Shown here: positions 16,701 through 37,625 of the stretch, in pieces | Layout of the letters: each line of letters opens with the position of its first letter | Numbering within the stretch: the stretch's first letter is position 1 | Assembly (NCBI GenBank): GCA_002269645.1 | Contig: NIVC01002064.1 | Location: 62,001-126,000, forward strand | Direction of reading: 5' to 3' | Source: Macrostomum lignano | Lineage: Eukaryota | Length of the DNA stretch: 64,000 nucleotides | The notes under the pieces: generated by a model | Seen by the model: the letters and a program-made list of their open reading frames with translations, nothing else | Databases searched by the model: none | Told to the model about the DNA's origin: nothing | Translations under genes and position numbers: made by a program

Positions 16701-19700
16701 ACATGCAGACAGACACCCAGGACACTAAGACATGCAGACAGACACCCAGGACACTAAGACATGCAGACAGACACCCAGGACACTAAGACATGCAGACAGA
16801 CACCCAGGACACTAAGACATGCAGACAGACACCCAGGACACTAAGACATGCAGACAGACACCCAGGACACTAAGACATGCAGACAGACACCCAGGACACT
16901 AAGACACACAGACAGACACCCAGGACACTAAGACATGCAGACAGACACCCAGGACACTAAGACATGCAGACAGACACCCAGGACACTAAGACATGCAGAC
17001 AGACACCAAGGACACTAAGACATGCAGACAGACACCCAGGACACTAAGACATGCAGACAGACGCCCAGGACACTAAGACATGCAGACAGACACCCAGGAC
17101 ACTAAGACATGCAGACAGACGCCCAGGACACTAAGACATGCAGACAGACGCCCAGGACACTAAGACATGCAGACAGACACCCAGGACACTAAGACATGCA
17201 GACAGACGCCCAGGACACTAAGACATGCAGACAGACGCCCAGGACACTAAGACATGCAGAAAGACACCCAGGACACTAAGACATGCAGACAGACGCCCAG
17301 GACACTAAGACATGCAGACAGACGCCCAGGACACTAAGACATGCAGACAGACACCCAGGACACTAAGACATGCAGACAGACACCCAGGACACTAAGACAT
17401 GCAGACAGACACCCAGGACACTAAGACATGCAGACAGACACCAAGGGCACTAAGACACACAGACAGACACCAAGGGCACTAAGACATGCAGACAGACACC
17501 AAGGGCACTAAGACATGCAGACAGACACCCAGGACACTAAGACATGCAGACAGACACCCAGGACACTAAGACACACAGACAGATACCAAGGGCACTAAGA
17601 CACACAGACAGACACCCAGGACACTAAGACATTCAGACAGACACTAAGGGCACTAAGACACACAGACAGACACCCAGGACACTAAGACACACAGACAGAC
17701 ACCAAGGACACTAAGACATTCAGACAGACACTAAGGGCACTAAGACACACAGACAGACACCCAGGACACTAAGACACACAGACAGACACCCAGGACACTA
17801 AGACACACAGACAGACACCCAGGACACTAAGACACACAGACAGACACCCAGGACACTAAGACATGCAGACAGACACCCAGGACACTAAGACACACAGACA
17901 GACACCCAGTACACTAAGACACACAGACAGACACCCAGGACACTAAGACACACAGACAGACACCCAGGACACTAAGACATGCAGACAGGCACCAAGGACA
18001 CTAAGACATTCAGACAGACACTAAGGGCACTAAGACACACAGACAGACACCCAGGACACTAAGACACACAGACAGACACCCAGGACACTAAGACACACAG
18101 ACAGACACCCAGGACACTAAGACATGCAGACAGACACCCAGGACACTAAGACATGCAGACAGACACCCAGGACACTAAGACATGCAGACAGACACCCAGG
18201 ACACTAAGACACACAGACAGACACCCAGGACACTAAGACACACAGACAGACACCCAGGACACTAAGACACACAGACAGACACCCAGGACACTAAGACATG
18301 CAGACAGACACCCAGGACACTAAGACATGCAGACAGACACCCAGGACACTAAGACATGCAGACAGACACCCAGGACACTAAGACACACAGACAGACACCC
18401 AGGACACTAAGACATGCAGACAGACACCCAGGACACTAAGACATGCAGACAGACACCCAGGGCACTAAGACATGCAGACAGACACCAAGGACACTAAGAC
18501 ATGCAGACAGACACCCAGGACACTAAGACACACAGACAGATACCAAGGGCACTAAGACATGCAGACAGGCACCAAGGACACTAAGACACACAGACAGACA
18601 CCAAGGGCACTAAGACATGCAGACAGACACCAAGAACACTAAGACATGCAGACAGACACCCAGGACACTAAGACACACAGACAGACACCAAGGGCACTAA
18701 GACATGCAGACAGACACCCAGGACACTAAGACACACAGACAGACACGCAGGACACTAAGACATGCAGACAGACACCCAGGACACTAAGACATGCAGACAG
18801 ACACCCAGGACACTAAGACATGCAGACAGACACCAAGGACACTAAGACATGCAGACAGACACCCAGGACACTAAGACATGCAGACAGACACCCAGGACAC
18901 TAAGACACACAGACAGACACCCAGGACACTAAGACACACAGACAGACACCCAGGACACTAAGACATGCAGACAGACACCCAGGACACTAAGACATGCAGA
19001 CAGACACCCGGGACACTAAGACACACAGACAGACACCCAGGACACTAAGACATGCAGACAGACACCCAGGACACTAAGACATGCAGACAGACACCAAGGA
19101 CACTAAGACATGCAGACAGACACCCAGGACACTAAGACATGCAGACAGACGCCCAGGACACTAAGACATGCAGACAGACGCCCAGGACACTAAGACATGC
19201 AGACAGACACCCAGGACACTAAGACATGCAGACAGACACCAAGGACACTAAGACATGCAGACAGACACCCAGGACACTAAGACATGCAGACAGACACCCA
19301 GGACACTAAGACACACAGACAGACACCCAGGACACTAAGACACACAGACAGACACCCAGGACACTAAGACATGCAGACAGACACCCAGGACACTAAGACA
19401 TGCAGACAGACACCCGGGACACTAAGACACACAGACAGACACCCAGGACACTAAGACATGCAGACAGACACCCGGGACACTAAGACATGCAGACAGACGC
19501 CCAGGACACTAAGACATGCAGACAGACACCCAGGACACTAAGACATGCAGACAGACACCTAGGACACTAAGACATGCAGACAGACACCCAGGACACTAAG
19601 ACACACAGACAGACACCCAGGACACTAAGACATGCAGACAGACACCCGGGACACTAAGACATGCAGACAGACGCCCAGGACACTAAGACATGCAGACAGA

Positions 19701-21576
19701 CACCCAGGACACTAAGACATGCAGACAGACACCCAGGACACTAAGACATGCAGACAGACACCCGGGACACTAAGACATGCAGACAGACACCCAGGACACT
19801 AAGACACACAGACAGACACCCAGGACACTAAGACATGCAGACAGACACCCAGGACACTAAGACATGCAGACAGACACCCGGGACACTAAGACATGCAGAC
19901 AGACACCCAGGACACTAAGACATGCAGACAGACACCCAGGACACTAAGACATGCAGACAGACACCAAGGACACTAAGACACACAGACAGACACCCAGGAC
20001 ACTAAGACATGCAGACAGACACCCAGGACACTAAGACATGCAGACAGACACCCAGGACACTAAGACATGCAGACAGACACCCAGGACACTAAGACATGCA
20101 GACAGACACCCAGGACACTAAGACATGCAGACAGACACCCAGGACACTAAGACATGCAGACAGACACCCAGGACACTAAGACATGCAGACAGACACCCAG
20201 GACACTAAGACATGCAGACAGACACCAAGACTCACAGCTCCTAATACACCGCAGGCATGACGGCAGTGTCGCTCACTTATCCACTGGACGTTGTTCGAAC
20301 TCGACTGGCTTATCAGTCGGCCGGCTGCGCCGATTATCCGCATAGCAACTATTCGGGCATCGCCGACTGTCTGCGCCACCTGCGCACCCAGCGCGCCCTG
20401 TTCGCCGGCCTGGCGCCCAGTCTGCTTGGCATGGCGCCTTACGCCGGCGTGAGCTTCTGCGCCTTCCACTGGCTTCAGAGGCAGGCCGTGGAGCGCTGGC
20501 CGGGTCTGTTCGCCGTGAGGGACGACGACGAGTCGCCTGCTCGACTGTGCACCTGGGCTCGACCCCTGATTGGTGGCCTGGCCGGAGCTGCCGCCCAGAC
20601 AGTCAGCTACCCACTGGACTGCGCCCGGCGATACATGCAGGTCTGGCACTGACTGTGTGTGCGCGGGCACTGGCACTGACTGTGTGTGCGGGCACTGGCA
20701 CTGTGTGTGCGCGGGCACTGGCACTGACTGTGTGTGCGCGGGCACTCGCACTGACTGTGTGTGTGTGTGCGGGCACTGGCACTGACTGTGTGTGTGCGGG
20801 CACTGGCACTGACTGTGTGTGTGCTGTCACTGTCACTCCATAACAAGGGCACTGTCACTACATAACAAGGGCACTGTCACTCCATAACAAGGGCACTGTC
20901 ACTACATAACAAGGGCACTGTCACTCCATAATAAGGGCACTGTCACTCCATAACAAGGGCACTGTCACTACATAACAAGGGCACTGTCACTACATAACAA
21001 GGGCACTGTCACTACATAACAAGGGCACTGGCACTGTCACTACATAACAAGGGCACTGGCACTGTCACTCCATAACAAGGGCACTGTCACTACATAACAA
21101 GGGCACTGGCACTGTCACTACATAACAAGGGCACTGGCACTGTCACTCCATAACAAGGGCACTGTCACTCCATAACAAGGGCACTGGCACTGTCACTCCA
21201 TAACAAGGGCACTGTCACTACATAACAAGGGCACTGTCACTCCATAACAAGGGCACTGGCACTGTCACTCCATAACAAGGGCACTGTCACTCCATAACAA
21301 GGGCACTGGCACTGTCACTCCATAACAAGGGCACTGTCACTCCATAACAAGGGCAACTGTCACTCTCAATTGCAGGTGGCGGGCGCTCCTGGCCGTTTCA
21401 GCTTGGCTGAAGTCCCGGCAGCGGGAGCCGCGGCCACGCTGTCGCAGCTGTACAGCCGCTACGGTGTGGCAGCCGGGCTGTACCGCGGCCTGTCGCTGAA
21501 CTACGTGAGGGTGGTGCCGACCGCTGGCGTGTCATTTGCAGCCTACGAGACTTTGCGACAGGCGTTCGGGGTCTGA
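13774..21576 (+). CDS. SLC25A16: Mitochondrial carrier SLC25A16 (Graves disease carrier; CoA-transporter subfamily), 6 exons, about 321 aa
   Basis: Exons 13774-13864, 14455-14547, 14682-14815, 14892-14952, 20255-20640 and 21376-21576 join in phase (966 nt). Three carrier signatures are present: APLDRVKILLQ, YPLDVVRTRLAYQ and YPLDCARRYMQ. FLCGGMAGCLAKTTVAP, NGAQMIRIFPYSAIQF and LYRGLSLNYVRVVP are typical of the SLC25A16/SLC25A42 clade and closer to SLC25A16. Confidence 0.88.
14090..14350. repeat. Degenerate ~20-bp repeat (GGGATGTTTGCTATCTAGG-like) in SLC25A16 intron 1
   Basis: Recurrent TTGCTAT / GGGGATG motifs. Confidence 0.7.
15295..20228. repeat. 29-bp satellite (GGACACTAAGACATGCAGACAGACACCCA)n, about 4.9 kb, filling SLC25A16 intron 4
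   Basis: About 170 tandem copies by length/unit, with a degenerate lead-in from about 15130. Confidence 0.98.
20641..21362. repeat. Two abutting minisatellites making up almost all of SLC25A16 intron 5
   Basis: (GGCACTGGCACTGACTGTGTGTGCGCG)n from the donor to about 20825, then (GGGCACTGTCACTCCATAACAA)n in 22/28-bp units to just before the acceptor. Confidence 0.93.
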
Positions 21577-21624
21577 GCTGGACTGGGAAACTCGCAGCAA
21601 GGAGATGCCCTGTGCCCGCTGCCC

Positions 21625-21995
21625 TGGCCTTCAACCCTATGGGCCTCCCTTCGACCCTATCGGACTCCCTTCAATCCTATGGGCCTCCCTTCACCCTTCA
21701 ACCTTTTCGCCCTCCCTTCAATCCTATGGGCCTCCCTTCAACCCTATGGGCCTCCCTTCAACCCTATGGGCCTCCCTTCAACCCTATGGGCCTACCTTTA
21801 ACACTTTCGGCCTCCCTTCAACCCTATCGACCTCCCTTAAACCCTATGGGCCTACATTTAACCTAATCTGACTCCCTTCAACCCGATGGGCCTCCCTTCC
21901 ACCCTATGGGCCTCTCTTAAACCCTATGGGCCTCCCTTCAACCCTTTGGGCCTCCCTTAAACCCTATCAACCTCTCTTCAACCCTACCGGACTCC
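21625..21995. repeat. 21-bp minisatellite (CCCTTCAACCCTATGGGCCTC)n just 3' of the SLC25A16 stop
   Basis: Tandem copies begin about 50 nt after the TGA at 21576. Confidence 0.92.
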
Positions 21996-23347
21996 CTTCT
22001 TGTATTTTTTGTAGGAAATAGGCCTCCAAAAATGCAAGATCTTTGATTTTTTATTTATGTTATACTACAGTGGTCCTTGCCTTCATATCGGCCTCTAGAT
22101 TGATATGCTTAACACTGGCTACTGTGAGTAGAGTTGCAAATTTCAGGAAAATTGTTTTCGCTAGCAAGTAATTCAGCTTTGCTGTGCTCCGAGTCTGAAA
22201 AAGAATTTTATATTCAATATTGGCACGCTCTCAGTTCTCGGGGTTAATCTGCACAAAAGTTTGACCCATTCATTGGACAAACTGTGTTTGTGTTGTTGCT
22301 TTACGAAAGATTATTGTTTTTAACTGTTCGATTTCTGCTTTCAATTGTTGCTAAGAGCAATGGTCACTTTTTATTTTCTCTTTAATTTTTCGATTTCGAA
22401 GGAATGTTTCTCTGGCCTGTAGAAGTTGAGCAAAGTATTTTTTGCTGAGCTTTTTAGTATTGATATTATTTTGCAGATTAGTTGCAATACAAATTTAGAT
22501 GTTGTAAAATATCGAACTAATTCTTACCTACACGAAGAAATTCTCTGCTAGATGAGCATTGGTAGCCACACTGCTTTTGCCATGCCAAGTTAGAGAAGCG
22601 GACCTTCAAATCTGCAAGACTGCAGATCAGAGACAGGTTGGGCCAGAGACAACACGCTACGACTTTGTCTATGGCCCAAACCTGTCTTTGCTCAGCAGGG
22701 TCTCAGTTTTGAATGACGACAAAAGCCATACTAATTTTAACAAATACTCCACGAGGATCTTGTCTTTGTACTCGTAGCAAGTCAAATCAAATCAATTTTA
22801 TATCTTGATAGATTTTTACTAGCTAGTGTGTTTCCGTTGCTACCTGCCTGTATATTAATATTAAACTGTTTTTTAACCGTTCAAATAGTGTAATAGATAA
22901 TATATTAATATCCCGCGCGTAATACAGCTCGTACTACTGACATAAGTAGACAGATTCTAGATTTTCATGCCCCAAAAAGAATTGCGGCAGTCAATATTCA
23001 TAGAGAATATGACTTGTTGCTGGTTAACTGTACTTTTATAAGATAATTTCTAACTTATTTTCGTTCTTTTTGTACATTATCTACCTGCTAGCGCTGTAAG
23101 TTAAGCAAAGTTGGCCGCGGTTAGTACGTAAACGTGGCTTTTAATAGGCTTGAGAAGCTGAGATGCTTCCCATATTCACCCCGCTGAGCTTCTGAGCTGC
23201 CGCAGAAGCACGGAGGCAGGGTGGGAGTTGACACCCTTAAAGAATTCATGATAGTCTTGACCAGGATTTTGCGGGCATAAAAATGAGAGCAAAATTATAC
23301 ATTGTTTGATTAAGCTGACTCATTTCATTGATCCTGTCAATCGAGTG

Positions 23348-24682
23348 CCATTGAGAATCGCCCCTTAATCATTGAGAATCGCCCTTTAATCATTGAGAAT
23401 CGCCCCTTAATCATTGAGAATCGCCCCTTAATCATTGAGAATCGCCCCTTAATCATTGAGAATCGCCCTTTAATCATTGAGAATCGCCCCTTAATCATTG
23501 AGAATCGCCCCTTAATCATTGAGAATCGCCCTTTAATCATTGAGAATCGCCCCTTAATCATTGAGAATCGCCCCTTAATCATTGAGAATCGCCCCTTAAT
23601 CATTGAGAATATCCTCTTAATCATTGAGAATATCCTCTTAATCATTGAGAATATCCTCTTAATCATTGAGAATATCCTCTTAATCATTGAGAATTGCCCC
23701 TTAGTCATTGAGAATCGCCCCTTAGTCATCGAGAATCGCCCCTTAATCATTGAGAATATCCTCTTAATCATTGAGAATATCCTCTTAATCATTGAGAATC
23801 GCCCCTTCATCATTGAGAATCGCCTCTTAATCATTGAGAATCGTCCCTTAGTCATTGAGAATCGCCCCTTCATCATTGAGAATCACTTCTTAGTCATTGA
23901 GAATCGCCCCTTAGTCATTGAGAATCGCCCCTTAATCATTGAGAATATCCTCTTAATCATTGAGAATATCCTCTTAATCATTGAGAATATCCTCTTAATC
24001 ATTGAGAATTGCCCCTTAGTCATTGAGAATCGCCCCTTAGTCATCGAGAATCGCCCCTTAATCATTGAGAATATCCTCTTAATCATTGAGAATATCCTCT
24101 TAATCATTGAGAATCGCCCCTTCATCATTGAGAATCGCCTCTTAATCATTGAGAATCGTCCCTTAGTCATTGAGAATCGCCCCTTCATCATTGAGAATCA
24201 CTTCTTAGTCATTGAGAATCGCCCCTTAGTCATTGAGAATCGCCCCTTAATCATTGAGAATATCCTCTTAATCATTGAGAATATCCTCTTAATCATTGAG
24301 AATATCCTCTTAATCATTGAGAATTGCCCCTTAGTCATTGAGAATCGCCCCTTAGTCATCGAGAATCGCCCCTTAATCATCGAGAATCGCCCCTTAATCA
24401 TTGAGAATATCCTCTTAATCATTGAGAATATCCTCTTAATCATTGAGAATCGCCCCTTCATCATTGAGAATCGCCTCTTAATCATTGAGAATCGTCCCTT
24501 AGTCATTGAGAATCGCCCCTTCATCATTGAGAATCACCTCTTAGTCATTGAGAATCGCCCCTTAGTCATTGAGAATCGCCTTAGTCATTGAGAATCGCCC
24601 CTTAATCATTGAGAATCGCCCCTTAGTCATTGAGAATCGCCTTAGTCATTGAGAATCGTCCCTTAATCATTGAGAATCGCCC
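23348..24682. repeat. 21-bp minisatellite (TCATTGAGAATCGCCCCTTAA)n with higher-order blocks
   Basis: Tandem array. The variant marker GAGAATCAC recurs at about 23879, 24194 and 24530. Confidence 0.96.
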
Positions 24683-26392: not shown

Positions 26393-29300
26393 AGGTTCCA
26401 GGGTAGCTACAGAATGGGGATCCAGGGTAGCTACAGAATGGGTTCCAGGGTAGCTACAGAATGGGTTCCAGGGTAGCTGCAGAATGGGGATCCAGGGTAG
26501 CTACAGAATGTGGTTCCAGGGTAGCTACAGATTGGGGTTCCAGGGTAGCTACAGAATGGGTTCCAGGGTAGCTACAGAATGGGATCCAGGGTAGCTACAG
26601 AATGGGTTCCAGGGTAGCTACAGATTGGGGTTCCAGGGTAGCTACAGAATGGGTTCCAGGGTAGCTACAGAATGGGATCCAGGGTAGCTACAGAATGGGA
26701 TCCAGGGTAGCTACAGAATGGGTTCCAGGGTAGCTACAGAATGGGGTTCCAGGGTAGCTACAGAATGGGGATCCAGGGTAGCTACAGAATGGGTTCCAGG
26801 GTAGCTACAGAATGGGTTCCAGGGTAGCTGCAGAATGGGGATCCAGGGTAGCTACAGAATGTGGTTCCAGGGTAGCTACAGATTGGGGTTCCAGGGTAGC
26901 TACAGAATGGGTTCTAGGGTAGCTACAGAATGGGATCCAGGGTAGCTACAGAATGGGTTCCAGGGTAGCTACAGATTGGGGTTCCAGGGTAGCTACAGAA
27001 TGGGTTCCAGGGTAGCTACAGAATGGGATCCAGGGTAGCTACAGAATGGGATCCAGGGTAGCTACAGAATGGGTTCCAGGGTAGCTACAGAATGGGTTCC
27101 AGGGTAGCTACAGGATGGGGATCCAGGGTAGCTACAGAATGGGTTCCAGGGTAGCTACAGAATGGGTTCTATGGTAGCTACAGAATGGGTTCCAGGGTAG
27201 CTACAGAATGGGGTTCCAGGGTAGCTACAGAATGGGGTTCCAGGGTAGCTACAGAATGGGGATCCAGGGTAGCTACAGAATGGGTTCCAGGGTAGCTACA
27301 GAATGGGATCCAGGGTAGCTACAGAATGGGTTCTATGGTAGCTACAGAATGGGTTCCAGGGTAGCTTCAGAATGGGTTCCAGGGTAGCTACAGAATGGGT
27401 TCCAGGGTAGCTTCAGAATGGGTTCCAGGGTAGCTACAGAATGGGTTCTATGGTAGCTACAGAATGGGTTCCAGGGTAGCTACAGAATGGGGTTCCAGGG
27501 TAGCTACAGAATGGGTTCCAGGGTAGCTACAGAATGGGATCCAGGGTAGCTACAGAATGGGGTTCCAGGGTAGCTACAGATTGGGGTTCCAGGGTAGCTA
27601 CAGAATGGGTTTCAGGGTAGCTACAGAATGGGATCCAGGGTAGCTACAGAATGGGATCCAGGGTAGCTACAGAATGGGTTCCAGGGTAGCTGCAGAATGG
27701 GGATCCAGGGTAGCTACAGAATGTGGTTCCAGGGTAGCTACAGATTGGGGTTCCAGGGTAGCTACAGAATGGGTTCCAGGGTAGCTACAGAATGGGATCC
27801 AGGGTAGCTACAGAATGGGTTCCAGGGTAGCTACAGATTGGGGTTCCAGGGTAGCTACAGAATGGGTTCCAGGGTAGCTACAGAATGGGTTCCAGGGTAG
27901 CTACAGAATGGGATCCAGGGTAGCTACAGAATGGGTTCCAGGGTAGCTACAGAATGGGTTCCAGGGTAGCTACAGGATGGGGATCCAGGGTAGCTACAGA
28001 ATGGGTTCCAGGGTAGCTACAGAATGGGTTCTATGGTAGCTACAGAATGGGTTCCAGGGTAGCTACAGAATGGGGTTCCAGGGTAGCTACAGAATGGGGT
28101 TCCAGGGTAGCTACAGAATGGGGATCCAGGGTAGCTACAGAATGGGTTCCAGGGTAGCTACAGAATGGGATCCAGGGTAGCTACAGAATGGGATCCAGGG
28201 TAGCTACAGAATGGGTTCCAGGGTAGCTTCAGAATGGGTTCCAGGGTAGCTACAGAATGGGGATCCAGGGTAGCTACAGAATGGGTTCCAGGGTAGCTAC
28301 AGAATGGGTTCTATGGTAGCTATAGAATGGGTTCCAGGGTAGCTACAGAATGGGGTTCCAGGGTAGCTACAGAATGGGTTCCAGGGTAGCTACAGAATGG
28401 GATCCAGGGTAGCTACAGAATGGGGTTCCAGGGTAGCTACAGATTGGGGTTCCAGGGTAGCTACAGAATGGGTTCCAGGGTAGCTACAGAATGGGATCCA
28501 GGGTAGCTACAGAATGGGATCCAGGGTAGCTACAGAATGGGTTCCAGGGTAGCTACAGAATGGGTTCCAGGGTAGCTACAAGATGGGATCCAGGGTAGCT
28601 ACAGAATGGGTTCCAGGGTAGCTACAGAATGGGTTCTATGGTAGCTACAGAATGGGTTCCAGGGTAGCTACAGAATGGGGTTCCAGGGTAGCTACAGAAT
28701 GGGGTTCCAGGGTAGCTACAGAATGGGGATCCAGGGTAGCTACAGAATGGGTTCCAGGGTAGCTACAGAATGGGATCCAGGGTAGCTACAGAATGGGATC
28801 CAGGGTAGCTACAGAATGGGTTCCAGGGTAGCTTCAGAATGGGTTCCAGGGTAGCTACAGAATGGGGATCCAGGGTAGCTACAGAATGGGTTCCAGGGTA
28901 GCTACAGAATGGGTTCTATGGTAGCTACAGAATGGGTTCCAGGGTAGCTACAGAATGGGGTTCTAGGGTAGCTACAGAATGGGGATCCAGGGTAGCTACA
29001 GAATGGGGTTCCAGGGTAGCTACAGAATGGGTTCCAGGGTAGCTACAGAATGGGTTCCAGGGTAGCTACAGAATGGGTTCCAGGGTAGCTACAGAATGGG
29101 GATCCAGGGTAGCTACAGAATGTGGTTCCAGGGTAGCTACAGAATGGGTTCCAGGGTAGCTACAGAATGGGTTCCAGGGTAGCTACAGAATGGGGATCCA
29201 GGGTAGCTACAGAATGGGTTCCAGGGTAGCTACAGAATGGGTTCTATGGTAGCTACAGAATGGGTTCCAGGGTAGCTACAGAATGGGGATCCAGGGTAGC

Positions 29301-30252
29301 TACAGATTGGGGTTCCAGGGTAGCTACAGAATGGGTTCCAGGGTAGCTACAGAATGGGTTCCAGGGTAGCTACAGAATGGGGTTCCAGGGTAGCTACAGA
29401 ATGGGATCCAGGGTAGCTACAGAATGGGGATCCAGGGTAGCTACAGATTGGGGTTCCAGGGTAGCTACAGAATGGGTTCCAGGGTAGCTACAGAATGGGG
29501 TTCCAGGGTAGCTACAGAATGGGGATCCAGGGTAGCTACAGAATGGGTTCCAGGGTAGCTACAGAATGGGTTCCAGGGTAGCTACAGAATGGGGATCCAG
29601 GGTAGCTACAGAATGGGGTTCCAGGGTAGCTACAGAATGGGGATCCAGGGTAGCTACAGAATGGGGTTCCAGGGTAGCTACAGAATGGGGATCCAGGGTA
29701 GCTACAGAATGGGGTTCCAGGGTAGCTACAGAATGGGGTTCCAGGGTAGCTACAGAATGGGGTTCCAGGGTAGCTTCAGAATGGGTTCCAGGGTAGCTAC
29801 AGAATGGGGTTCCAGGGTAGCTACAGAATGGGGTTCCAGGGTAGCTACAGAATGGGGTTCCAGGGTAGCTACAGAATGGGGTTCCAGGGTAGCTACAGAA
29901 TAGGGTTCCAAGGTAGCTACAGAATGGGTTCCAGGGTAGCTACAGAATGGGGTTCCAGGGTAGCTACAGAATGGGGTTCCATGGTAGCTACAGATTGGGG
30001 TTCCAGGGTAGCTACAGAATGGGGTTCCAGGGTAGCTACAGAATGGGGTTCCAGGGTAGCTACAGATTGGGGTTCCGGGGTAGCTACAGAATGGGGATCT
30101 AGGGTAGCTGCAGAATGTGGTTCCAGGGTAGCTACAGAATGGGGGATCCATGGTAGCTACAGAATGGGGATCCAGGGTAGCTACAGAATGGGGATCTAGG
30201 GTAGCTGCAGAATGGGGTTCCATGGTAGCTACAGAATGGGGATCCAGGGTAG
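26393..30252. repeat. 22-24-bp satellite (GGGTTCCAGGGTAGCTACAGAAT)n, about 3.9 kb
   Basis: Tandem array with variable G-run length. It is the source of the EWGSRVAT / MGFQGSYR ORFs. Confidence 0.98.
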
Positions 30253-30762
30253 ACAGATTAGCTATCAAGTGCACACAATGTACTACTTCAATACATGGTT
30301 TTTTACGCAGTCGCGCAAGAAAAAGCTCTTTCTCCTTTAACTGAGACTAATCTGTTAATTAGTGTAATTAGTTTTCCAGAGACACAAATTGCGGCAGTTG
30401 ACTCGAACTGCGCACTGGACAGAGTTGAGTAAATGGCGCAGTGTGTATTTCAATCCGTGGCGCACAAAACTGTTTAGCCGGAGCCGTTGGGAGGATTATA
30501 ATAGAGAATTAAATGTAGGTTGCCGAAAGGCTGTCAGCCAGGCAGAGGTATCAGTAATACTACTATTATTATCTATTAATTAGTATTATATGCATGCAGA
30601 TTTTTTCTGGCCAGTTGGGACGTGCGTGATTAGTGAATATTATATGCAATCATCTTATACGGATTCGAATTCACGCCAGTCTGGTATTTCACAAATTTTG
30701 CATTTGTTAAAATCCAATCGGGATCACGTGGTCACTGACTTCTAAGAAAACGAACTCAAAGC

Positions 30763-32652
30763 TCAGATCAGCGTCTCGCGCGCGATCGGCGACTGCGAAC
30801 TGTCGCCATAGTAACGGCGCACAATGCGCGGCGGCCGGTAGGCGCCAAAATCGGCAACGCCGGCGTCACCGCTGCCGGTGGTGGCGCCGTCGTTGAAATC
30901 GTCGCCGCAGAAGCTGCTCTCGGCGTAGCGCGGGCCCAGCCGCCTGGCCCGTCGGCCGGAGTTCGAGCATCTCTCGCAGCCGTTGCAGCCGACCAACAGC
31001 CGCGCCGGCCCAGCGCTGTAGGGCGGCGGCGGCTGCCGCTGATCGGCGAGCAGATGAGGTCGGGGAGGCTGCCGAGCCAGCAGCGGCTCCTGCAGGCACA
31101 GCGGCGGCGGCGGCGGCGGATACGGCAGCGCCTTGGAGGCGACGCCAGCGGCGGCGAACTGCGGAAGCAGCGGCGATGGCGGAGTTCGCGACCTCTCCGG
31201 CTGCTGCTGCTGCTGCCATTGCCGGAGCACCGGCGAGCTGCCTTGGTTCAACTGACGGTGACGTTGGCATCGCTGACGATGTCGACGCCTCCTCTGCTCC
31301 CGGTGGCACCGTCGGCGGCTGGCGCTGCGCGCCTCCTCCCCGGCGCTCTCCTCGTCGACATCCTCGCTGGACCGGCCCGACTGGTACTCCATCTCCAGCT
31401 CCTCCGGCGCTGCCTCGTCGTCCTCCTCGAACTCATCTTGGTCTTCTTCTTTCGACTCGTTCCCGTCTCTCTCGTCTTCCTTCTTAGTGCCCCCGGCGCT
31501 CCGCCGACGCCGACGCCCGACGTCGCAATAGTCGACGCGCGCCCGCTGCAGGCTGGCCCGCTGCTTCTGGCTGGCGATGCGCAGCAGGATGACGTCGCAC
31601 AGCATGGAGGACAGGCCGAACAGGGCCAGGCCGCTGCCCAGGTTCATCGACAGTCTGTAGAAATCGAACCGGCCGCCCTCGCCGCTGACCGTGACGAAGA
31701 TCTTGATGCCGTAGGCGTGCACCAGCATCCGACGGTCCTGGCCCTCGCTCCTGTAGTTGTAGGCGTACTGCACGGAGAAGCCCTCAATGTCCGTGCCTTT
31801 GCCGATGTCCAGCTCGCGGAAGTGGTACTTGGGCAGGCAGTGCTCCTCCGGCAGGTCGAAGTTGCACTGCCAGGAAATGTCGATGCCGAACGCGCCGCCG
31901 ATTTTGTAGACCTCCTCGCTGGTGGTGCCAGAATAGGCGAGGATGTCGCCGAGGCGGAACACTGGGCAGTAGGTGAGGTTTGGGTGCGCCTTGTCGTACA
32001 GGCAGGTGTTCAGGTACTCGCTGGTCATCCAGTCCAGGATGTTGCGCCGTTTCTTATTGAATGCTCGAAAATCGACGCTGTTTTTTAGCTGGACGGTGAA
32101 GTTTCTGGCCCGGGTGAGCACCGAGCCGACTGGCAGGTTGAAGGCGTCCTGACTGGGCGCCGGGCACCAGCCGTAGCTGATGCAGGTTCTCGTGTCCGGG
32201 CTGCACCGGCCCGTGCGCCGGCCCTGACTGCTGATGCTGCCGGCCGGACAATCGCCGTCCTGATGGCAGTGGCCGACCGACTCCGGACACTCGCTCATGG
32301 CCTGCTTGTCGGTCACCCGAGCATTTGTTGTAATGAAAATGGCGCCATTCATGATCGGCGGTATGATGTAATCGGCCGAGTCCCACACTCTGGCGCCGTA
32401 GTCCGGATCTCCCGACCTGTTCACAAAGTCCAGGCCCTTCACTTTGAACACCACGCCGCCCTCCGGCGTCTCTATAACCTGGTAGCCTTTCTTGTGCCAG
32501 ATAATGTAGAACAGGAAGTAGACAATGACAGACAGCTGCACGCTGCGGTAGAACAGGCCGAACTTGACGCTGCGAATCACCACCACTTTCTGCAGGCGGT
32601 ACTCGAAGAACCCAGCCAGCATGCGGCTGAAGAACGATCTCAGGGAGCACAT
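30763..32652 (-). CDS. P2X purinoceptor-family ion channel, single exon, 629 aa, divergent ATP-binding site
   Basis: Uninterrupted ORF with first ATG at 32652 (the track's 32679 start is TTG). It contains FFEY..KVV, TM1 (LFYRSVQLSVIVYFLFYIIWHKKGYQ), KVKG, VWDSADY, ten ectodomain Cys, NFT..KN, CPVFRLGDI, AYGI and TM2 (MNLGSGLALFGLSSMLCD), followed by a long acidic/Pro/Arg-rich tail. Confidence 0.93.
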   Translation of the reverse strand: MCSLRSFFSRMLAGFFEYRLQKVVVIRSVKFGLFYRSVQLSVIVYFLFYIIWHKKGYQVIETPEGGVVFKVKGLDFVNRSGDPDYGARVWDSADYIIPPIMNGAIFITTNARVTDKQAMSECPESVGHCHQDGDCPAGSISSQGRRTGRCSPDTRTCISYGWCPAPSQDAFNLPVGSVLTRARNFTVQLKNSVDFRAFNKKRRNILDWMTSEYLNTCLYDKAHPNLTYCPVFRLGDILAYSGTTSEEVYKIGGAFGIDISWQCNFDLPEEHCLPKYHFRELDIGKGTDIEGFSVQYAYNYRSEGQDRRMLVHAYGIKIFVTVSGEGGRFDFYRLSMNLGSGLALFGLSSMLCDVILLRIASQKQRASLQRARVDYCDVGRRRRRSAGGTKKEDERDGNESKEEDQDEFEEDDEAAPEELEMEYQSGRSSEDVDEESAGEEARSASRRRCHREQRRRRHRQRCQRHRQLNQGSSPVLRQWQQQQQPERSRTPPSPLLPQFAAAGVASKALPYPPPPPPLCLQEPLLARQPPRPHLLADQRQPPPPYSAGPARLLVGCNGCERCSNSGRRARRLGPRYAESSFCGDDFNDGATTGSGDAGVADFGAYRPPRIVRRYYGDSSQSPIARETLI

Positions 32653-34479
32653 CCTGGCCGGACTCTGGGAACCTGCCAACCGACTCTAGGAAAACCGGCC
32701 CTCCCTCCCGAGTAGAGCGTCTACCTTAAAGCGTATACTGTCGCGTGGACGCGGAGGGAAGCTGCATGGAACTCGCGGATAGTGATTGGACAAGAAGCGC
32801 TGGCAACCCCCCTTCAAGCCCGTCCCCCCGGTCTCCTCCCATTCTCTCCTGAACCTTTTTCTCCAACTAGCGGCAGCTTCTCCCCATTGCCAATAAAATT
32901 CAACACACTGGCTGCATGAGGCCCGATGGTGACAAGGACAGCAGAGGAGAGCGATATTGCCTGAGCAGGGAGGGAGGGGAGGAACGGGCGAGGGGCGCTC
33001 GACTACAGAGAAGAAGCATGAAGGCCTCGGAGACAGGGGTGAAGGCGTTTGGCAGAGGCTAAAAGGGGAAGAAAGGGCCTTTCGGGCTTGCGGCGCCAGC
33101 CCGCGGGGCAAGGGCGCTGGAGATTAAAAAAATGACGGAAAAGGAAAGAAGGGAGCAGAGAGAGCTGGGCGGAGAGATTGGAGATCTGAAAGACGAGTAT
33201 GGGGAGGAACCGGCTAGAGGAAGAGAAAGTTCAGCCGATTTCGACCCGATATTTCCCCCTGTCTAATATAGCTAGGGATGCCCCATCGAATCGCGGGCAA
33301 ATCCCAGTCCGCCTGATCCCGACTCACAGGCTCACTCTGTCTCTGCTCCGCCGATCATCTTGGCTAGAGCCCGCGCCTCTGGGGAGCGCGCTCAACCCCC
33401 TGGCAGGCGATATAGGCTTCATCATCCATCCCGCTGATCAGCCTCCCCCTCCTCTGATCCCTGCCAGTATCCCTTCTACAGGGAGACTTATACTGAGGAG
33501 CTGATCCCATGCGAAGGGGAGAAGACAGGCAGACCGACGGCTAGATGACGAGAACCCCTGCCCCGCGGCCTGAGACAATACACGCACATAGACGGCAAGT
33601 TTACGAATGCGGCTACCATAGGACAGCTTCCAGATCGAATTAAACAAAAGCTCGATAGAGAAAGAGAGAAAGAATGGTTTAATAAAACCATGGACTGCGT
33701 AGGCGGAGGCAAGGCGAAAGAAGTGTGGGAGTGAGGCATAGGCCAGCTAAAATCGACTGCTGCACGGCAATAACACGAACTATAAGCCCTGGAAACTCAG
33801 AACTTGGAGCAAAGTGGGCAAGCACTCCAAGGACAGGCAGATCTGAGCAGGGGGGGGGGAGTTCAGCAGGAAAGAGGCGGAGAAAGAGGAAGTATACTTG
33901 GCAGCAACGTGCAACCTGCATCTGTGTGTTGGGGTTGCTGATCGATGAATAGGCTGCGTTCCCCATTTTTCCTCAAAAAAGGAGGGCCTGAGAGACACTG
34001 GCTGCTGCTCCCCCAGTTTCCACCCAACCACTCCCCCGCTCCATCCCCTAGGGTTGGGTGGTGTATGATGCGAGAAAGAAAACTGGGGATTTTTCGCCCT
34101 CAATTCCCCTTTCCGATCCTGTTTCGTCAAGCCCAGCTGGCTGCATAGCGAGGCCGAGAATGCAGCGCGTGAGCAATGGGCTTGGCAGCTCAATAGACAA
34201 AAACATAATCGGGTAGGAGGGGGAGAGACAAGCCTATACCCGCTAATCGTCAGGTGCAGACTCAGAGAGACAGAGGCAGCTCGCTCTAATGCACTGAAAT
34301 GTTTGCATATATAACATTAATAGATGTTTGGATTCTATCGTAGAATCTCAATTCAAATTTCGGCAGGTACATTTTCCCCGGGGTACTGTTCCTGAATCGA
34401 TATCGCGCGACTAAATTCGCTAATTTCATTTCTTAGAAGTGTGCAGCACCAATTAGATAGCTGCCTATCAGACTGCCTA

Positions 34480-35253: not shown

Positions 35254-35363
35254 TCAGCTTCTGTCTCCATCTGATTTAACGCATTACCGAACTCATCCGT
35301 ACACTCGACTAAACAAAACTGTCAATCAAGCTAACAGACACAACGGCACAGTTAGGCTAGCTT

Positions 35364-37266
35364 TTAAGCCTCCATCGCGTTGGCATCGGCCTCGGAGTAC
35401 TTGCCCTTCTCGGCGCCTCGGGCCCTGCCGGCGGCTTTGCGGTCCAACAGGCCGCGCCTGTCCCGGTCCAGCTTGAGCTTCGTGATCACCACCTGAGGCG
35501 GAATTCATAGGTGAGGGTCTTTGAAGTGAAGACTGCGGCTCTTGAAAGTTTGGTTATGGCGATTCTTAATGGGGCTGGGGGCGATTCCTAATGGGGTCGG
35601 GGCGATTCTTAATGGGGTTGGGGCGATTCTTAATGGGGTTGGGGCGATTCCTAATGGGGTTGGGGCGATTCTTAATGGGGTTGGGGCGATTCCTAATGGG
35701 GTTGGGGCAATTCCTAATGGGGTTGAGGGCGATTATTAATGGGGTTGGGGGCGATTCCTAATGGGGTTGAGGGCGACTCATAATGGGGTTGGGGGCGATT
35801 CCTAATGGGGCTGGGCGATTCCTAATGAGGGTTTGGGGGCGATTTTTAATAGGTATTTTGCAATGGGGTTCTTAAAATGTTTTTGAGCAGCATGTAAAAG
35901 TCAAAATTTGAAAGTCAATAGTTCAAGTCTATTAGTGGGAGAGAAAAACCAGCAGTCGAGTCGAGAACACGCTAACCATACTAAATAGCAGGAAGCTTAG
36001 TCTGCCTGATGAGTAAAATAGTACTCAAATGTCTGGCCTTACAAATTATCAAAAGACTGGTTTCCAATCATTTTTGCTTCGCATGAGAGCAAGAGACGAA
36101 AAAAGTTGCTTTTATATTAAAGAATTTCAGACGATGCAGTCAGGACAGGTGCATGCGTGTGTAGAAGCTAATATGGCAAAGGTGTGCGTTTCTAGATCCG
36201 AAAACAGCGTCATTGGAGGGGTGTTCTTCAAGCCGAAGGGAGCCGAGCCTAAGATGGGTGTCTGTGGAGCCTAAGATGGGTGTCTGTGGAGCCTAAGATG
36301 GGTGTCTGTGGAGCCTAAGATGGGTGTCTGTGGAGCCTAAGATGGGTGTCTGTGGAGCCTAAGATGGGTGTCTGTGGAGCCTAAGATGGGTGTCTGTGGA
36401 GCCTAAGATGGGTGTCTGTGGAACCTAAGATGGGTGTCTGTGGAGCCTAAGATGGGTATCTGTGGAGCCTAAGATGGGTGTCTGTGGAGCCTAAGATGGG
36501 TGTCTGTGGAGCCTAAGATGGGTGTCTGTGGAGCCTAAGATGGGTATCTGTGGAGCCTTAGATGGGTGTCTGTGGAGCCTAAGATGGGTGTCTGTGGAGC
36601 CTAAGATGGGTGTCTGTGGAGCCTAAGATGGGTGTCTGTGGAGCCTAAGATGGGTGTCCGGGAAGCCTAAGATGGGTGTTTGTGAAGGCTAAGTTGGGTG
36701 TCTGTAAAGGCTAAGATGGGTGTTTGTGGAGCCTAAGATGGGTGTCTGTGGAGCCTAAGATAGGTGTCCGGGAAGCCTAAGATGTGTTAGTGGAGCCTAA
36801 GATGGGTGTCCAGGCTAAGATGGTTGTCTGTAAAGGCTAAGATGGGTGTCCGGGAAGCCTAAATGCCTTACATCTTTTTTCGGTGAACTTGAAGCGAAAT
36901 GGTGAACAGTAATAGAGGGGTCACGTCTAAAAAAGCAGAACTTCCGTCCATTATTACCTTGCTAGGATGCAGGTTAACATAGACGGTAGCACCGTTAGCC
37001 TTCTCCCTTTGAATCCGTTCCACGTGGATGACATACTTGGAACGATAGACTGCCACCACTTTGCCAGTCTGGGTGCCCTTGTGGTGACCCCGGACAAGTT
37101 GCACCTCGTCGTCTTTGCGGATGGGCATAGAGCGGACATTGTACTTGGTGCGCAGCTCCTTGGACAGCGGAGCCGACATCAGCTTGCGTCGAATGTGCGA
37201 CGGCGCATTGAAATAGCGCTGGCGATTCTTCCGCTTGGAGCTGGTGACGCTCTTGTTGAACTTCAT
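35364..37266 (-). CDS. RPL26: 60S ribosomal protein L26 (uL24), 2 coding exons, 145 aa
   Basis: Exon 37266-36958 ([39 protein letters not shown]...[11 protein letters not shown]...[16 protein letters not shown]) splices AAG|GT..CAG|GTG to exon 35492-35364 ([12 protein letters not shown]...[14 protein letters not shown]). Total 438 nt. Confidence 0.97.
35560..35850. repeat. 21-bp G-rich minisatellite (GGGGCGATTCYTAATGGGGTT)n in the RPL26 intron
   Basis: Tandem copies starting about 65 nt from the acceptor. Confidence 0.92.
36245..36865. repeat. 22-bp minisatellite (GAGCCTAAGATGGGTGTCTGTG)n in the RPL26 intron
   Basis: Tandem copies. Confidence 0.95.
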
Positions 37267-37625
37267 CTCTGCTGCTGCAATAGTTAACAATTGCGATTTG
37301 ATTATTGTTGAATCCGTTAACTCAGATCAGTTCGCGATCTCCACGCGGCAGACAATACGATTTTCCCCCTCAAACTCCAAAGTGAATCAGTCCCACTGTT
37401 AATAATTACGCAACTGATACTGCCATTTGACTGCCGGGTAGTGTTGTTTGGTGGTATAAGGAATATGATTTCATCCTTTGACTTTGGACCTGTGATTCTA
37501 AAATATAATCGAAGTTTTTGTATACTACAAGTACATACTTTACGAGTATAAAAGATGCATAGCCATGAATTTTTATTAGGGATGGGGGCGTCATGGGGTA
37601 GGGGTGCCACCTCGGAGGCGTCAAG

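What the first reader, a model, noticed from the sequence alone, without database searches (positions are those of the whole stretch)
31717..31776. P2X-fold channel that has lost half of its ATP-binding site: candidate ATP-independent or differently gated P2X
Seen: the ORF keeps the ten ectodomain Cys, KxKG, NFT..KN and both TM helices (GSG, terminal Asp). Where P2X receptors have GYNFRFAKYY it reads GFSVQYAYNY, and where they have RTLIKAYGIR it reads RMLVHAYGIK. Established: the NFR Asn/Arg and that Lys (N293, R295 and K313 in human P2X4) coordinate the ATP phosphates, and mutating them greatly lowers ATP potency. The N-terminal T-x-K/R site (here YRLQK) and the C-terminal YxxxK motif (here LQRAR) are also gone. 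Inference: an intact 629-codon ORF with a conserved scaffold but a rewired ligand pocket suggests a channel gated by another ligand or stimulus, or a modulatory subunit of heterotrimers, not a decaying pseudogene.
Basis: partly seen in the sequence, partly recalled or inferred. Interest (0 to 1): 0.8.

Follow-up and report, generated by a model that had tools for sequence, protein, structure and literature searches.

The report
P2X subunit without ATP-binding residues
A flatworm (Macrostomum lignano) gene encodes an otherwise intact, selectively maintained P2X ion-channel subunit whose ATP-phosphate-gripping residues have been replaced, so ATP probably cannot open it on its own and it may serve as a partner subunit or respond to another signal.

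Summary
Window 30763-32652 (- strand) is an uninterrupted 629-codon gene of Macrostomum lignano. It encodes a P2X-family protein (Pfam PF00864, E=4e-99) whose model matches solved P2X structures. The flagged bases encode SVQYAYNYRSEGQDRRMLVH.

Of 68 positions at least 90% conserved in 43 canonical P2X sequences, the protein keeps 62, which is within the canonical range. The six it changes are:
- N293S, R295Q and K313H, which contact the ATP phosphates;
- E168P, the salt-bridge partner of R295;
- T17L and the lysine of the YxxxK motif.

A 58-62% identical paralogue is also changed at all six positions. The other half-site (K67, K69, T186, K190), all ten cysteines and the pore motifs are kept.

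Three near-identical genomic copies differ by 10 synonymous and 5 non-synonymous changes (omega about 0.14, P=5e-4). The public gene models are transcript-derived. It is therefore not a decaying pseudogene.

My best reading, which is inferred and not shown: the homotrimer cannot bind ATP in the canonical way, and the subunit most likely works in heterotrimers with canonical paralogues. Gating by another stimulus remains open.

Parasitic flatworms have a separate clade of ATP-site-degenerate P2X paralogues. Whether it is orthologous to this gene is unresolved. I found no paper describing either group.

The parts
30763..32652 (-). Complete intronless CDS of the divergent P2X subunit: 629 codons plus TGA. 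It corresponds to BOX15_Mlig019017 copies g2/g3 in GCA_002269645.1.
   Evidence: ORF list. Translation and stop codon. 99% identical to PAA81535.1. GC3 is 0.84.
31561..32607 (-). P2X receptor domain (aa 16-364).
   Evidence: Pfam PF00864, E=4e-99. AF2 model pLDDT 79.4; Foldseek top hits are all P2X structures, with TM-score normalised to target length up to 0.83.
32494..32568 (-). TM1 helix (aa 29-53).
   Evidence: AF2/DSSP helix H29-53. Aligns to TM1 of hP2X4.
32587..32601 (-). YRLQK: N-terminal YxTxK/R motif with the Thr (hP2X4 T17) replaced by Leu.
   Evidence: T is present in 39 of 43 canonical sequences. L is present in both Macrostomum divergent paralogues.
32434..32445 (-). KVKG: the retained ATP-phosphate lysines K67 and K69.
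   Evidence: Column map; coordinates.
32155..32166 (-). CPAP: E168 (equivalent to hP2X3 E156) replaced by Pro. E156 is the acidic-chamber residue and the salt-bridge partner of the NFR arginine.
   Evidence: Equivalence shown through hP2X2 CPVEDG and hP2X4 CPVEDD and PMC11352409. The R281-E156 salt bridge is reported in PMC6590987.
32080..32103 (-). NFTVQLKN: F185, T186 and K190 retained. L188, which contacts the adenine base (my recollection of the zebrafish P2X4-ATP structure, not a tool result), is replaced by Gln.
31807..31821 (-). FRELD: R278 replaced by Glu. R278A is non-functional in rP2X4.
   Evidence: PMC3874471 table. Also non-Arg in all eight neodermatan divergent paralogues.
31768..31782 (-). 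GFSVQ in place of G(Y/W)NFR: N293S, F294V, R295Q.
31702..31731 (-). RMLVHAYGIK in place of RTLIKAYGIR: K313H.
31579..31662 (-). TM2 pore helix with NLGSGLAL and D354 conserved.
31537..31551 (-). LQRAR in place of the C-terminal YxxxK surface-stabilisation motif (Y->L, K->R).
   Evidence: Motif function from PMC3837535.
30766..31512 (-). Low-complexity cytoplasmic tail (aa 381-629) with acidic, Arg-rich, Gln-rich and Pro-rich tracts and a PPPPY motif at 31018-31032.
   Evidence: Translation. Tail omega is 0.13 between the window and L001. The tail is frameshifted in the third copy, L003.

Best explanation
Shown:
- This is a real, transcribed, selectively maintained M. lignano gene for a P2X-fold channel subunit.
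- The subunit keeps the trimer scaffold, the five disulfides, the pore (GSG, D354) and the K67/K69/T186/K190 face of the ATP pocket.
- It has lost every conserved residue of the opposing face (N293, R295, K313), together with E168 and R278. It has also lost two cytoplasmic motifs (T17 and YxxxK).

Inferred:
- The two faces come from adjacent subunits. A homotrimer would therefore have three defective pockets and should be insensitive to ATP, or nearly so.
- The most likely working mode is as a heteromeric partner of the canonical M. lignano P2X paralogues (P0007/P0026, P0020).
- In a trimer of one divergent and two canonical subunits, the divergent subunit still gives its intact KxK/T/K face to a canonical NFR/K face. 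That leaves two complete ATP sites, which is reported to be enough for gating, while ATP stoichiometry, kinetics and trafficking would be altered.
- The loss of YxxxK and T17 fits a subunit that depends on partners for surface expression, as mammalian P2X6 does.
For: - Family and fold.
- Targeted loss: 62 of 68 conserved positions are kept. The six changed are T17, E168, N293, R295, K313 and the YxxxK lysine, and all six are also changed in paralogue P0002. Enrichment at the ATP site: Fisher P=0.0012.
- Purifying selection: window versus L001 gives dS 0.020, dN 0.0028, omega 0.136. Across three copies there are 10 synonymous and 5 non-synonymous events, binomial P=5e-4. The CDS is 99.3% identical between copies, against 95-96.5% in the flanks.
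- Transcription: the GenBank models of this assembly come from an RNA-seq-based transcriptome (PMC5730564).
- Mutagenesis: rP2X4 R295A/K and K313A/R are non-functional or about 10,000-fold weaker, and N293C gives a major loss. K68C/F291C cross-linking shows the two faces lie on adjacent subunits. Two ATP molecules suffice for activation. P2X2/3 heteromers tolerate a lysine-dead P2X2 subunit (PMC3874471).
- Even the most divergent ATP-gated P2X (Ostreococcus) keeps the K313 equivalent (PMC3853471).
- P2X6 precedent for a heteromer-only subunit (PMC3837535).
- Canonical partners exist in the same genome.
Against: - There is no direct evidence of co-assembly, co-expression or any current.
- E168P lies on the retained face, so that face is not fully intact either.
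- The only available model of the paralogue P0002 lacks the KVKG strand. This is probably a model error, but if it is real the retained face is not conserved within the clade.
- The neodermatan divergent paralogues have degraded both faces. This shows that P2X-like proteins can persist with no usable half-site, which favours an ATP-independent role.
- The selection estimate rests on only 15 substitutions among copies within one genome.
Confidence: 0.45

Rival explanations
1. The protein forms a homotrimeric P2X-fold channel gated by something other than ATP. Candidates include protons (His at position 313), a metal, or a different small ligand sitting in the remodelled inter-subunit pocket. 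It could also be a constitutive leak channel.
For: The pocket is changed at many positions: R278E, E168P, L188Q, N293S, F294V, R295Q and K313H. Its charge shifts from strongly basic towards neutral or acidic. Four of the new residues (P168, Q188, E278, V294) are identical in the 58-62% identical paralogue. The pore and scaffold are fully conserved, and selection is purifying. An independent or related neodermatan clade has persisted with both half-sites degraded.
Against: The residues at the three key positions differ between the two paralogues (S/V, Q/E, H/R), as expected for relaxed constraint rather than a newly specified site. Four identical residues out of seven is no more than the roughly 60% background identity. 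The retention of K67, K69, T186 and K190 has no explanation under this reading. I know of no P2X family member shown to be gated by a non-nucleotide ligand (own knowledge; none turned up).
Confidence: 0.2
2. The protein is still ATP-gated, but with very low potency. It might act, for example, in an organelle or a niche with millimolar ATP, using the remaining lysines plus His313 or other basic residues.
For: K67, K69, T186 and K190 are retained. Position 313 carries His (Arg in P0002), which can be cationic. Some non-animal P2X receptors work at 100-500 uM ATP in intracellular membranes (PMC3853471). Loss of YxxxK fits an intracellular location.
Against: In rP2X4 even the conservative R295K and K313R changes abolish or greatly reduce function. 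Here N293, F294, R295, K313, E168 and R278 are all changed together, and P0002 has Glu at position 295. All characterised ATP-gated P2X receptors keep the K313 equivalent.
Confidence: 0.15
3. The protein has no channel function. It could be a recently disabled or decaying duplicate, possibly a retrocopy, or a dominant-negative or scaffolding protein.
For: The CDS is intronless, whereas canonical paralogue P0007 has at least 5 introns and the genome average is about 5 per gene. One of the three copies carries a 1-bp deletion that frameshifts the tail. Several cloned P2X homologues give no current, such as DdP2XC.
Against: Omega is about 0.14 (P=5e-4), in both the domain and the tail. 62 of 68 conserved positions are retained, including all the cysteines and the pore motifs. 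The 58-62% identical paralogue still has an open P2X domain with changes at the same positions, so the state is old yet the scaffold persists. GC3 is 0.84. No poly(A) remnant was seen, and the phylogeny does not place the gene as a recent copy of any canonical M. lignano gene (2-16% bootstrap).
Confidence: 0.12

Closest known systems
Canonical flatworm P2X receptors (Schistosoma mansoni SchP2X, ATP-gated; M. lignano P0007/P0026/P0020)
   Same: Same family and fold, 42-45% identity. All ten cysteines, KxKG, NFT..KN and the TM2 GSG/Asp are shared. The flatworm-type xQK N-terminus is shared.
   Different: Canonical members have G-W-N-F-R, K313, E168, R278, T17 and YxxxK. They also have a C-x11-C loop before CEIYGWCP, where the window protein has C-x6-C. 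Canonical P0007 is multi-exon, while this gene is intronless.
Mammalian P2X6 (a subunit that is retained in the ER and non-functional alone, and works only in P2X2/6 or P2X4/6 heteromers)
   Same: It is the proposed functional analogue: a subunit that is non-functional alone and depends on canonical partners (PMC3837535).
   Different: As far as I know, P2X6 keeps the canonical ATP-binding residues. Its defect lies in assembly and ER exit through its N-terminus. Here the defect is in the ligand site itself. There is no orthology between the two.
Neodermatan divergent P2X paralogues, annotated 'P2X purinoceptor 4' (Fasciola A0A504YYX1, Opisthorchis A0A4S2MB78, Clonorchis, Trichobilharzia CAH8840334, Schistosoma margrebowiei A0A183LTH8, Dibothriocephalus A0A3P7LC49)
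   Same: They are flatworm P2X paralogues with replaced N293/R295/K313 (for example S-Q-Q..Q, I-Q-E..T, S-M-R..H). They have also lost T17, E168 and R278, and they share the C-x6-C loop and an 'EG(F/S)S' motif.
   Different: They carry large head-domain, pre-NFT and left-flipper insertions that are absent here. They have P18 where this clade has Q18. They have also degraded K69, and retain only 52-54 of the 68 conserved positions. Grouping with the window clade gets only 20-26% bootstrap support, and signature sites are split 3/4/6.
Dictyostelium P2XC and other cloned P2X homologues that give no ATP current
   Same: They are P2X-family proteins that fail to form ATP-activated channels on heterologous expression (PMC3853471).
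   Different: They are very distant, non-animal intracellular receptors, and the molecular reason for their silence is not the same documented loss of residues. The window protein has not been tested functionally.

Membership tests
P2X receptor family (Pfam PF00864; structural family) | Significant match to the family profile over its full length | tested here: met
   E=4e-99, 332 bits against a cut-off of 27, profile positions 1-352 of 361.
P2X receptor family (Pfam PF00864; structural family) | Two transmembrane helices flanking a large ectodomain with the P2X fold | tested here: met
   AF2 model with pLDDT 79.4 and helices 29-53 and 331-384. The Foldseek top 50 hits are all P2X1-7 structures, E down to 5e-36.
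P2X receptor family (Pfam PF00864; structural family) | Ten conserved ectodomain cysteines (five disulfides) | tested here: met
   All ten align with hP2X4 C116-C270.
P2X receptor family (Pfam PF00864; structural family) | TM2 pore motif (N-x-G-S-G ... D354) | tested here: met
   NLGSGLAL and LCD are conserved.
ATP-gated P2X receptor (functional class) | Phosphate-binding lysines K67 and K69, plus T186 and K190, on one subunit face | tested here: met
   KVKG and NFT..LKN are present.
ATP-gated P2X receptor (functional class) | N293-F294-R295 and K313 on the adjacent subunit face | tested here: not met
   S-V-Q and H are found instead. These residues are required in mutagenesis studies (PMC3874471).
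ATP-gated P2X receptor (functional class) | ATP-evoked cation current | not testable with these tools
   This needs electrophysiology or Ca2+ imaging.
ATP-gated P2X receptor (functional class) | Cytoplasmic YxTxK/R (N-terminal) and YxxxK (C-terminal) motifs | tested here: not met
   YRLQK (T->L) and LQRAR (Y->L, K->R) are found instead.
Neodermatan divergent P2X clade | Monophyly with that clade | tested here: inconclusive
   NJ bootstrap for the union is 20-26%, while the neodermatan clade alone gets 90-99%. Signature sites are split 3/4/6.
Neodermatan divergent P2X clade | Head-domain, pre-NFT and left-flipper insertions | tested here: not met
   The insertions are absent from the window protein and from P0002.
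Processed retrogene | Intronless CDS while the parent family is multi-exon | tested here: met
   The gene is a single ORF. P0007 has at least 5 introns over 12.8 kb. The genome mean is about 5 introns per gene.
Processed retrogene | Poly(A) remnant or target-site duplication, and an identifiable recent parent gene | tested here: not met
   There is no A-tract in the 400 nt after the stop codon. The gene is not sister to any canonical M. lignano P2X (2-16% bootstrap). If retroposition did occur, it is ancient.

The most novel reading that the evidence does not exclude
The window gene and the neodermatan ATP-site-degenerate paralogues together form an ancient, flatworm-wide lineage of P2X-fold channels. 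On this reading the lineage abandoned ATP early in platyhelminth evolution and is gated by a different ligand or stimulus. It would be the first non-purinergic branch of the P2X superfamily.
Probability: 0.12. Interest if true: 0.85.

Novelty: new variant of a known kind. Interest (0 to 1): 0.6.

Why it matters
P2X receptors are defined by ATP gating, and every functionally characterised member keeps the lysine and arginine residues that are lost here.

A P2X subunit held under purifying selection after losing one complete face of the ATP pocket is a natural experiment on three questions:
- how many intact sites a trimer needs in order to gate;
- whether P2X families evolve dedicated non-binding (structural or modulatory) subunits, as Cys-loop and glutamate receptor families do;
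- whether the P2X fold can be put to use for other stimuli.

M. lignano has transgenesis and RNAi methods (PMC5730564), so this can be tested in vivo. Related degenerate paralogues occur in liver and blood flukes. They are currently labelled 'P2X purinoceptor 4', an annotation that probably misstates their pharmacology. That matters for ion-channel-based anthelmintic target lists.

Tried and rejected
1. The first homology search, with the full protein, was starved by the low-complexity tail (18 hits). I re-ran it with the domain alone and with a profile.
2. DNA for paralogue P0002 could not be obtained, because no gene with that exact product is on record. I therefore could not compute a paralogue-level dN/dS or check its missing KVKG strand.
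3. Orthology with the neodermatan divergent clade stayed unresolved. I tried NJ with two distance corrections, Dayhoff-6 recoding, taxon-removal experiments and signature-site counts. No ML phylogeny program is available.
4. Loop length (C-x6-C versus C-x11-C) splits flatworm P2X sequences cleanly. It is homoplastic across animals, however, so I did not accept it as a synapomorphy.
5. Recent retrocopy of a canonical M. lignano gene: rejected on phylogeny and on the absence of hallmarks.
6. Pseudogene: rejected on omega, conserved-site retention and GC3.
7. Compensating basic residues: none were gained in the NFR or K313 strands, and K298 is also lost. R144 in the head loop is new and shared with P0002, but I could not place it relative to the pocket without trimer coordinates.
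8. Literature searches for this gene ID and for flatworm P2X paralogues found only gene counts and no description of the ATP-site loss.
Full report
**What is in the sequence**

The minus strand of window 30763-32679 is one open reading frame. From the ATG at 32652 it encodes 629 residues ending in TGA. The flagged bases 31717-31776 encode exactly SVQYAYNYRSEGQDRRMLVH, residues 293-312.

The protein matches Pfam PF00864 (P2X_receptor) at E=4e-99 over almost the whole profile. Its best solved relative is human P2X4 (E=8e-75). An AlphaFold2 model (pLDDT 79.4) retrieves only P2X1-7 structures (E down to 5e-36).

The organism is the free-living flatworm Macrostomum lignano. A 99% identical protein is PAA81535.1, BOX15_Mlig019017g3.

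**Checking the observation**

I mapped the protein onto human P2X4 numbering, taking the hP2X4 sequence from the PDB alignment.

- Retained: K67, K69, F185, T186, K190, all ten ectodomain cysteines, the TM2 GSG motif and D354.
- Changed: N293S, F294V, R295Q, K313H, T17L, and YxxxK to LQRAR.

The alignment has no gaps in these strands.

**An unbiased look at what has changed**

I took all 68 alignment columns that are at least 90% conserved in 43 canonical P2X sequences from flatworms, tardigrades, a brachiopod, a sponge, vertebrates and others.

- The window protein keeps 62 of them. Canonical sequences themselves keep 55-68.
- The six changed positions are T17, E168, N293, R295, K313 and the YxxxK lysine.
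- All six are also changed in a second M. lignano protein, P0002 (A0A1I8ISC6, 58-62% identical). It has L, P, V, E, R and R at those positions.

E168 is the equivalent of hP2X3 E156. I established this through the CPVE(D/V)(D/G) alignment and PMC11352409. In hP2X3 this glutamate forms a salt bridge with R281, the NFR arginine, and helps hold Mg-ATP (PMC6590987). So the arginine and its partner were lost together.

Four of eight ATP/Mg-ATP-site columns are changed, against two of sixty others (Fisher P=0.0012).

Further substitutions shared by both paralogues and rare elsewhere lie in or near the pocket:
- R278E (R278A is non-functional in rP2X4);
- L188Q (adenine contact, from my recollection of the zebrafish P2X4-ATP structure);
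- F294V and P196R.

The damage is therefore focused on the ligand site and on two cytoplasmic motifs. It is not scattered as it would be in a decaying gene.

**Is the gene alive?**

The public assembly GCA_002269645.1 holds three syntenic copies, all next to a ribosomal protein L26 gene:
- the window's own contig;
- L001 (NIVC01000525.1);
- L003 (NIVC01000441.1).

Window versus L001:
- 13 differences in 1890 nt, 9 synonymous and 4 non-synonymous;
- dS 0.020, dN 0.0028, omega 0.136;
- omega is similar in the P2X domain (0.15) and the tail (0.13);
- the flanks are only 95-96.5% identical, against 99.3% for the CDS.

Across all three copies there are 10 synonymous and 5 non-synonymous events (binomial P=5e-4 against neutrality).

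L003 has a 1-bp deletion at codon 387. It frameshifts only the low-complexity tail. This could be real or an assembly error.

Other indicators:
- GC3 is 0.84 against 0.64 for the CDS overall.
- The GenBank gene models of this assembly derive from an RNA-seq-based transcriptome (PMC5730564). At least one copy is therefore transcribed.
- The same paper explains the triplication: 180 Mb of the assembly lies in duplicated blocks at least 95% identical.
- P0002 is changed at the same six positions yet is about 40% diverged while keeping the scaffold. The ATP-site loss is therefore old and has been followed by long-term constraint.

**Origin**

The CDS has no intron. The canonical paralogue P0007 spans 12.8 kb with at least five introns, and the genome average is about five introns per gene. 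An ancient retroposition or intron loss is possible. No poly(A) remnant is visible.

An exhaustive HMMER scan of 1.84 billion representatives found nothing closer than 45% identity apart from P0001 and P0002.

In NJ trees:
- window + P0002 form a pair at 100% bootstrap;
- they are not sister to any canonical M. lignano gene (2-16%);
- they tend to fall within, or next to, the flatworm P2X radiation (47-58%).

**A wider pattern**

I surveyed the key columns in the best 150 family representatives and looked up their names. Fasciola, Fasciolopsis, Opisthorchis/Clonorchis, Trichobilharzia, Schistosoma margrebowiei and the tapeworm Dibothriocephalus all carry a second kind of P2X paralogue, annotated 'P2X purinoceptor 4'.

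- In these paralogues N293, R295 and K313 are variously replaced, for example S-Q-Q..Q, I-Q-E..T and S-M-R..H.
- T17, E168 and R278 are also lost.
- The group is monophyletic (90-99% bootstrap).
- It carries large insertions that the window protein lacks, and it has also degraded K69.

Whether it is orthologous to the Macrostomum pair is unresolved:
- the bootstrap for the union is 20-26%;
- signature sites are split 3/4/6;
- two discrete characters conflict, the C-x6-C loop and residue Q18/P18.

In the papers I could search, flatworm P2X genes are only counted. Their ATP sites are not discussed.

**Mechanism**

Established knowledge:
- The KxK/T/K residues and the NFR/K residues sit on adjacent subunits (K68C/F291C cross-link).
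- rP2X4 R295A/K and K313A/R are non-functional or about 10,000-fold weaker.
- Two ATP molecules suffice for gating.
- P2X2/3 heteromers tolerate a lysine-dead P2X2 subunit (all from PMC3874471).
- Even the Ostreococcus receptor keeps the K313 equivalent (PMC3853471).

Inference: a homotrimer of the window protein has three defective pockets and should not respond to ATP at physiological concentrations.

The K67/K69/T186/K190 face is fully kept while the opposite face is completely lost. The simplest functional reading is therefore a heteromeric partner. In a trimer of one divergent and two canonical subunits, two pockets remain complete.

Loss of YxxxK, a surface-stabilisation motif (PMC3837535), and of T17 fits dependence on partners. 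P2X6 behaves this way: it is retained in the ER when alone and functional only in heteromers.

I put this at about 0.45. The alternatives are:
- a homomeric channel gated by something else (0.2);
- a low-potency ATP channel (0.15);
- a non-channel or dying gene (0.12).

Weak points of my preferred reading:
- there are no co-assembly data;
- E168P lies on the 'kept' face;
- the P0002 model lacks the KVKG strand;
- the fluke paralogues persist with both faces degraded.

**Verdict**

The proposed functions remain hypotheses.

The protein belongs to the P2X structural family, but it fails a defining feature of the ATP-gated functional class. I rate it a new variant of a known kind. It is of moderate to high interest, and of higher interest if the flatworm-wide ATP-independent lineage proves real.

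Noticed in passing
window 15291-20226; 26394-30273; about 20 further arrays across the window: The window is packed with minisatellites. A 29-bp unit repeated about 170 times at 15291-20226 explains the AT-skew of 0.75 there. A 23-bp unit repeated about 165 times ends about 490 bp downstream of the P2X stop codon. The long 'ORFs' with MGFQGSYR-type repeats are translations of these arrays.
   Followed up: partly
L003 8001-9404 (NIVC01000441.1), equivalent to window codon 387 (about 31492-31494): The third genomic copy (Mlig019017g2) has a 1-bp deletion in a G-run. It frameshifts the cytoplasmic tail and gives a 467-aa product with an intact P2X domain. This may be a real variant or an assembly error.
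   Followed up: partly
P0060, P0065, P0049, P0072, P0042, P0086, P0178, P0180 (no loci fetched): Liver flukes, blood flukes and a tapeworm have a monophyletic set of P2X paralogues with degenerate ATP-site residues and large ectodomain insertions. They are all annotated simply as 'P2X purinoceptor 4'.
   Followed up: partly
P0011 (Logan contig, 1859 bp) and P0033 (MetaClust), organism unknown: These two proteins show the reciprocal pattern to the window protein. K69 becomes S or F and K190 becomes S, while N293, R295 and K313 are kept. They group with the neodermatan divergent clade at 64-84% bootstrap.
   Followed up: no
P0067 (Eptatretus burgeri, with a Myxine glutinosa cluster-mate annotated 'P2X purinoceptor 3-like'): Hagfish P2X3-like proteins carry N293S, R295K and K313Q, so ATP-site erosion is not confined to flatworms.
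   Followed up: no
window 31018-31032 (-), aa 541-545: The tail contains a PPPPY (PY-type) motif. It sits among acidic (aa 402-423), Arg-rich (aa 446-467), Gln-rich and Pro-rich tracts, and may be a WW-domain/ubiquitin-ligase docking site. Tail omega is 0.13.
   Followed up: no
P0002 (UniProt A0A1I8ISC6): This gene model has about 260 N-terminal residues that do not look like protein. It also lacks the beta-strand carrying KVKG, so it is probably a mis-prediction in the older assembly. No DNA was available to check.
   Followed up: partly
window about 35360-37270 (-) and about 20950-24450 (+), by synteny with L001 4845-6776 (+) and 18235-21731 (-); L001 runs reversed relative to the window: The neighbouring genes are a ribosomal protein L26 gene, present in all three copies, and a mitochondrial carrier gene. 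Both are multi-exon, unlike the P2X gene.
   Followed up: no
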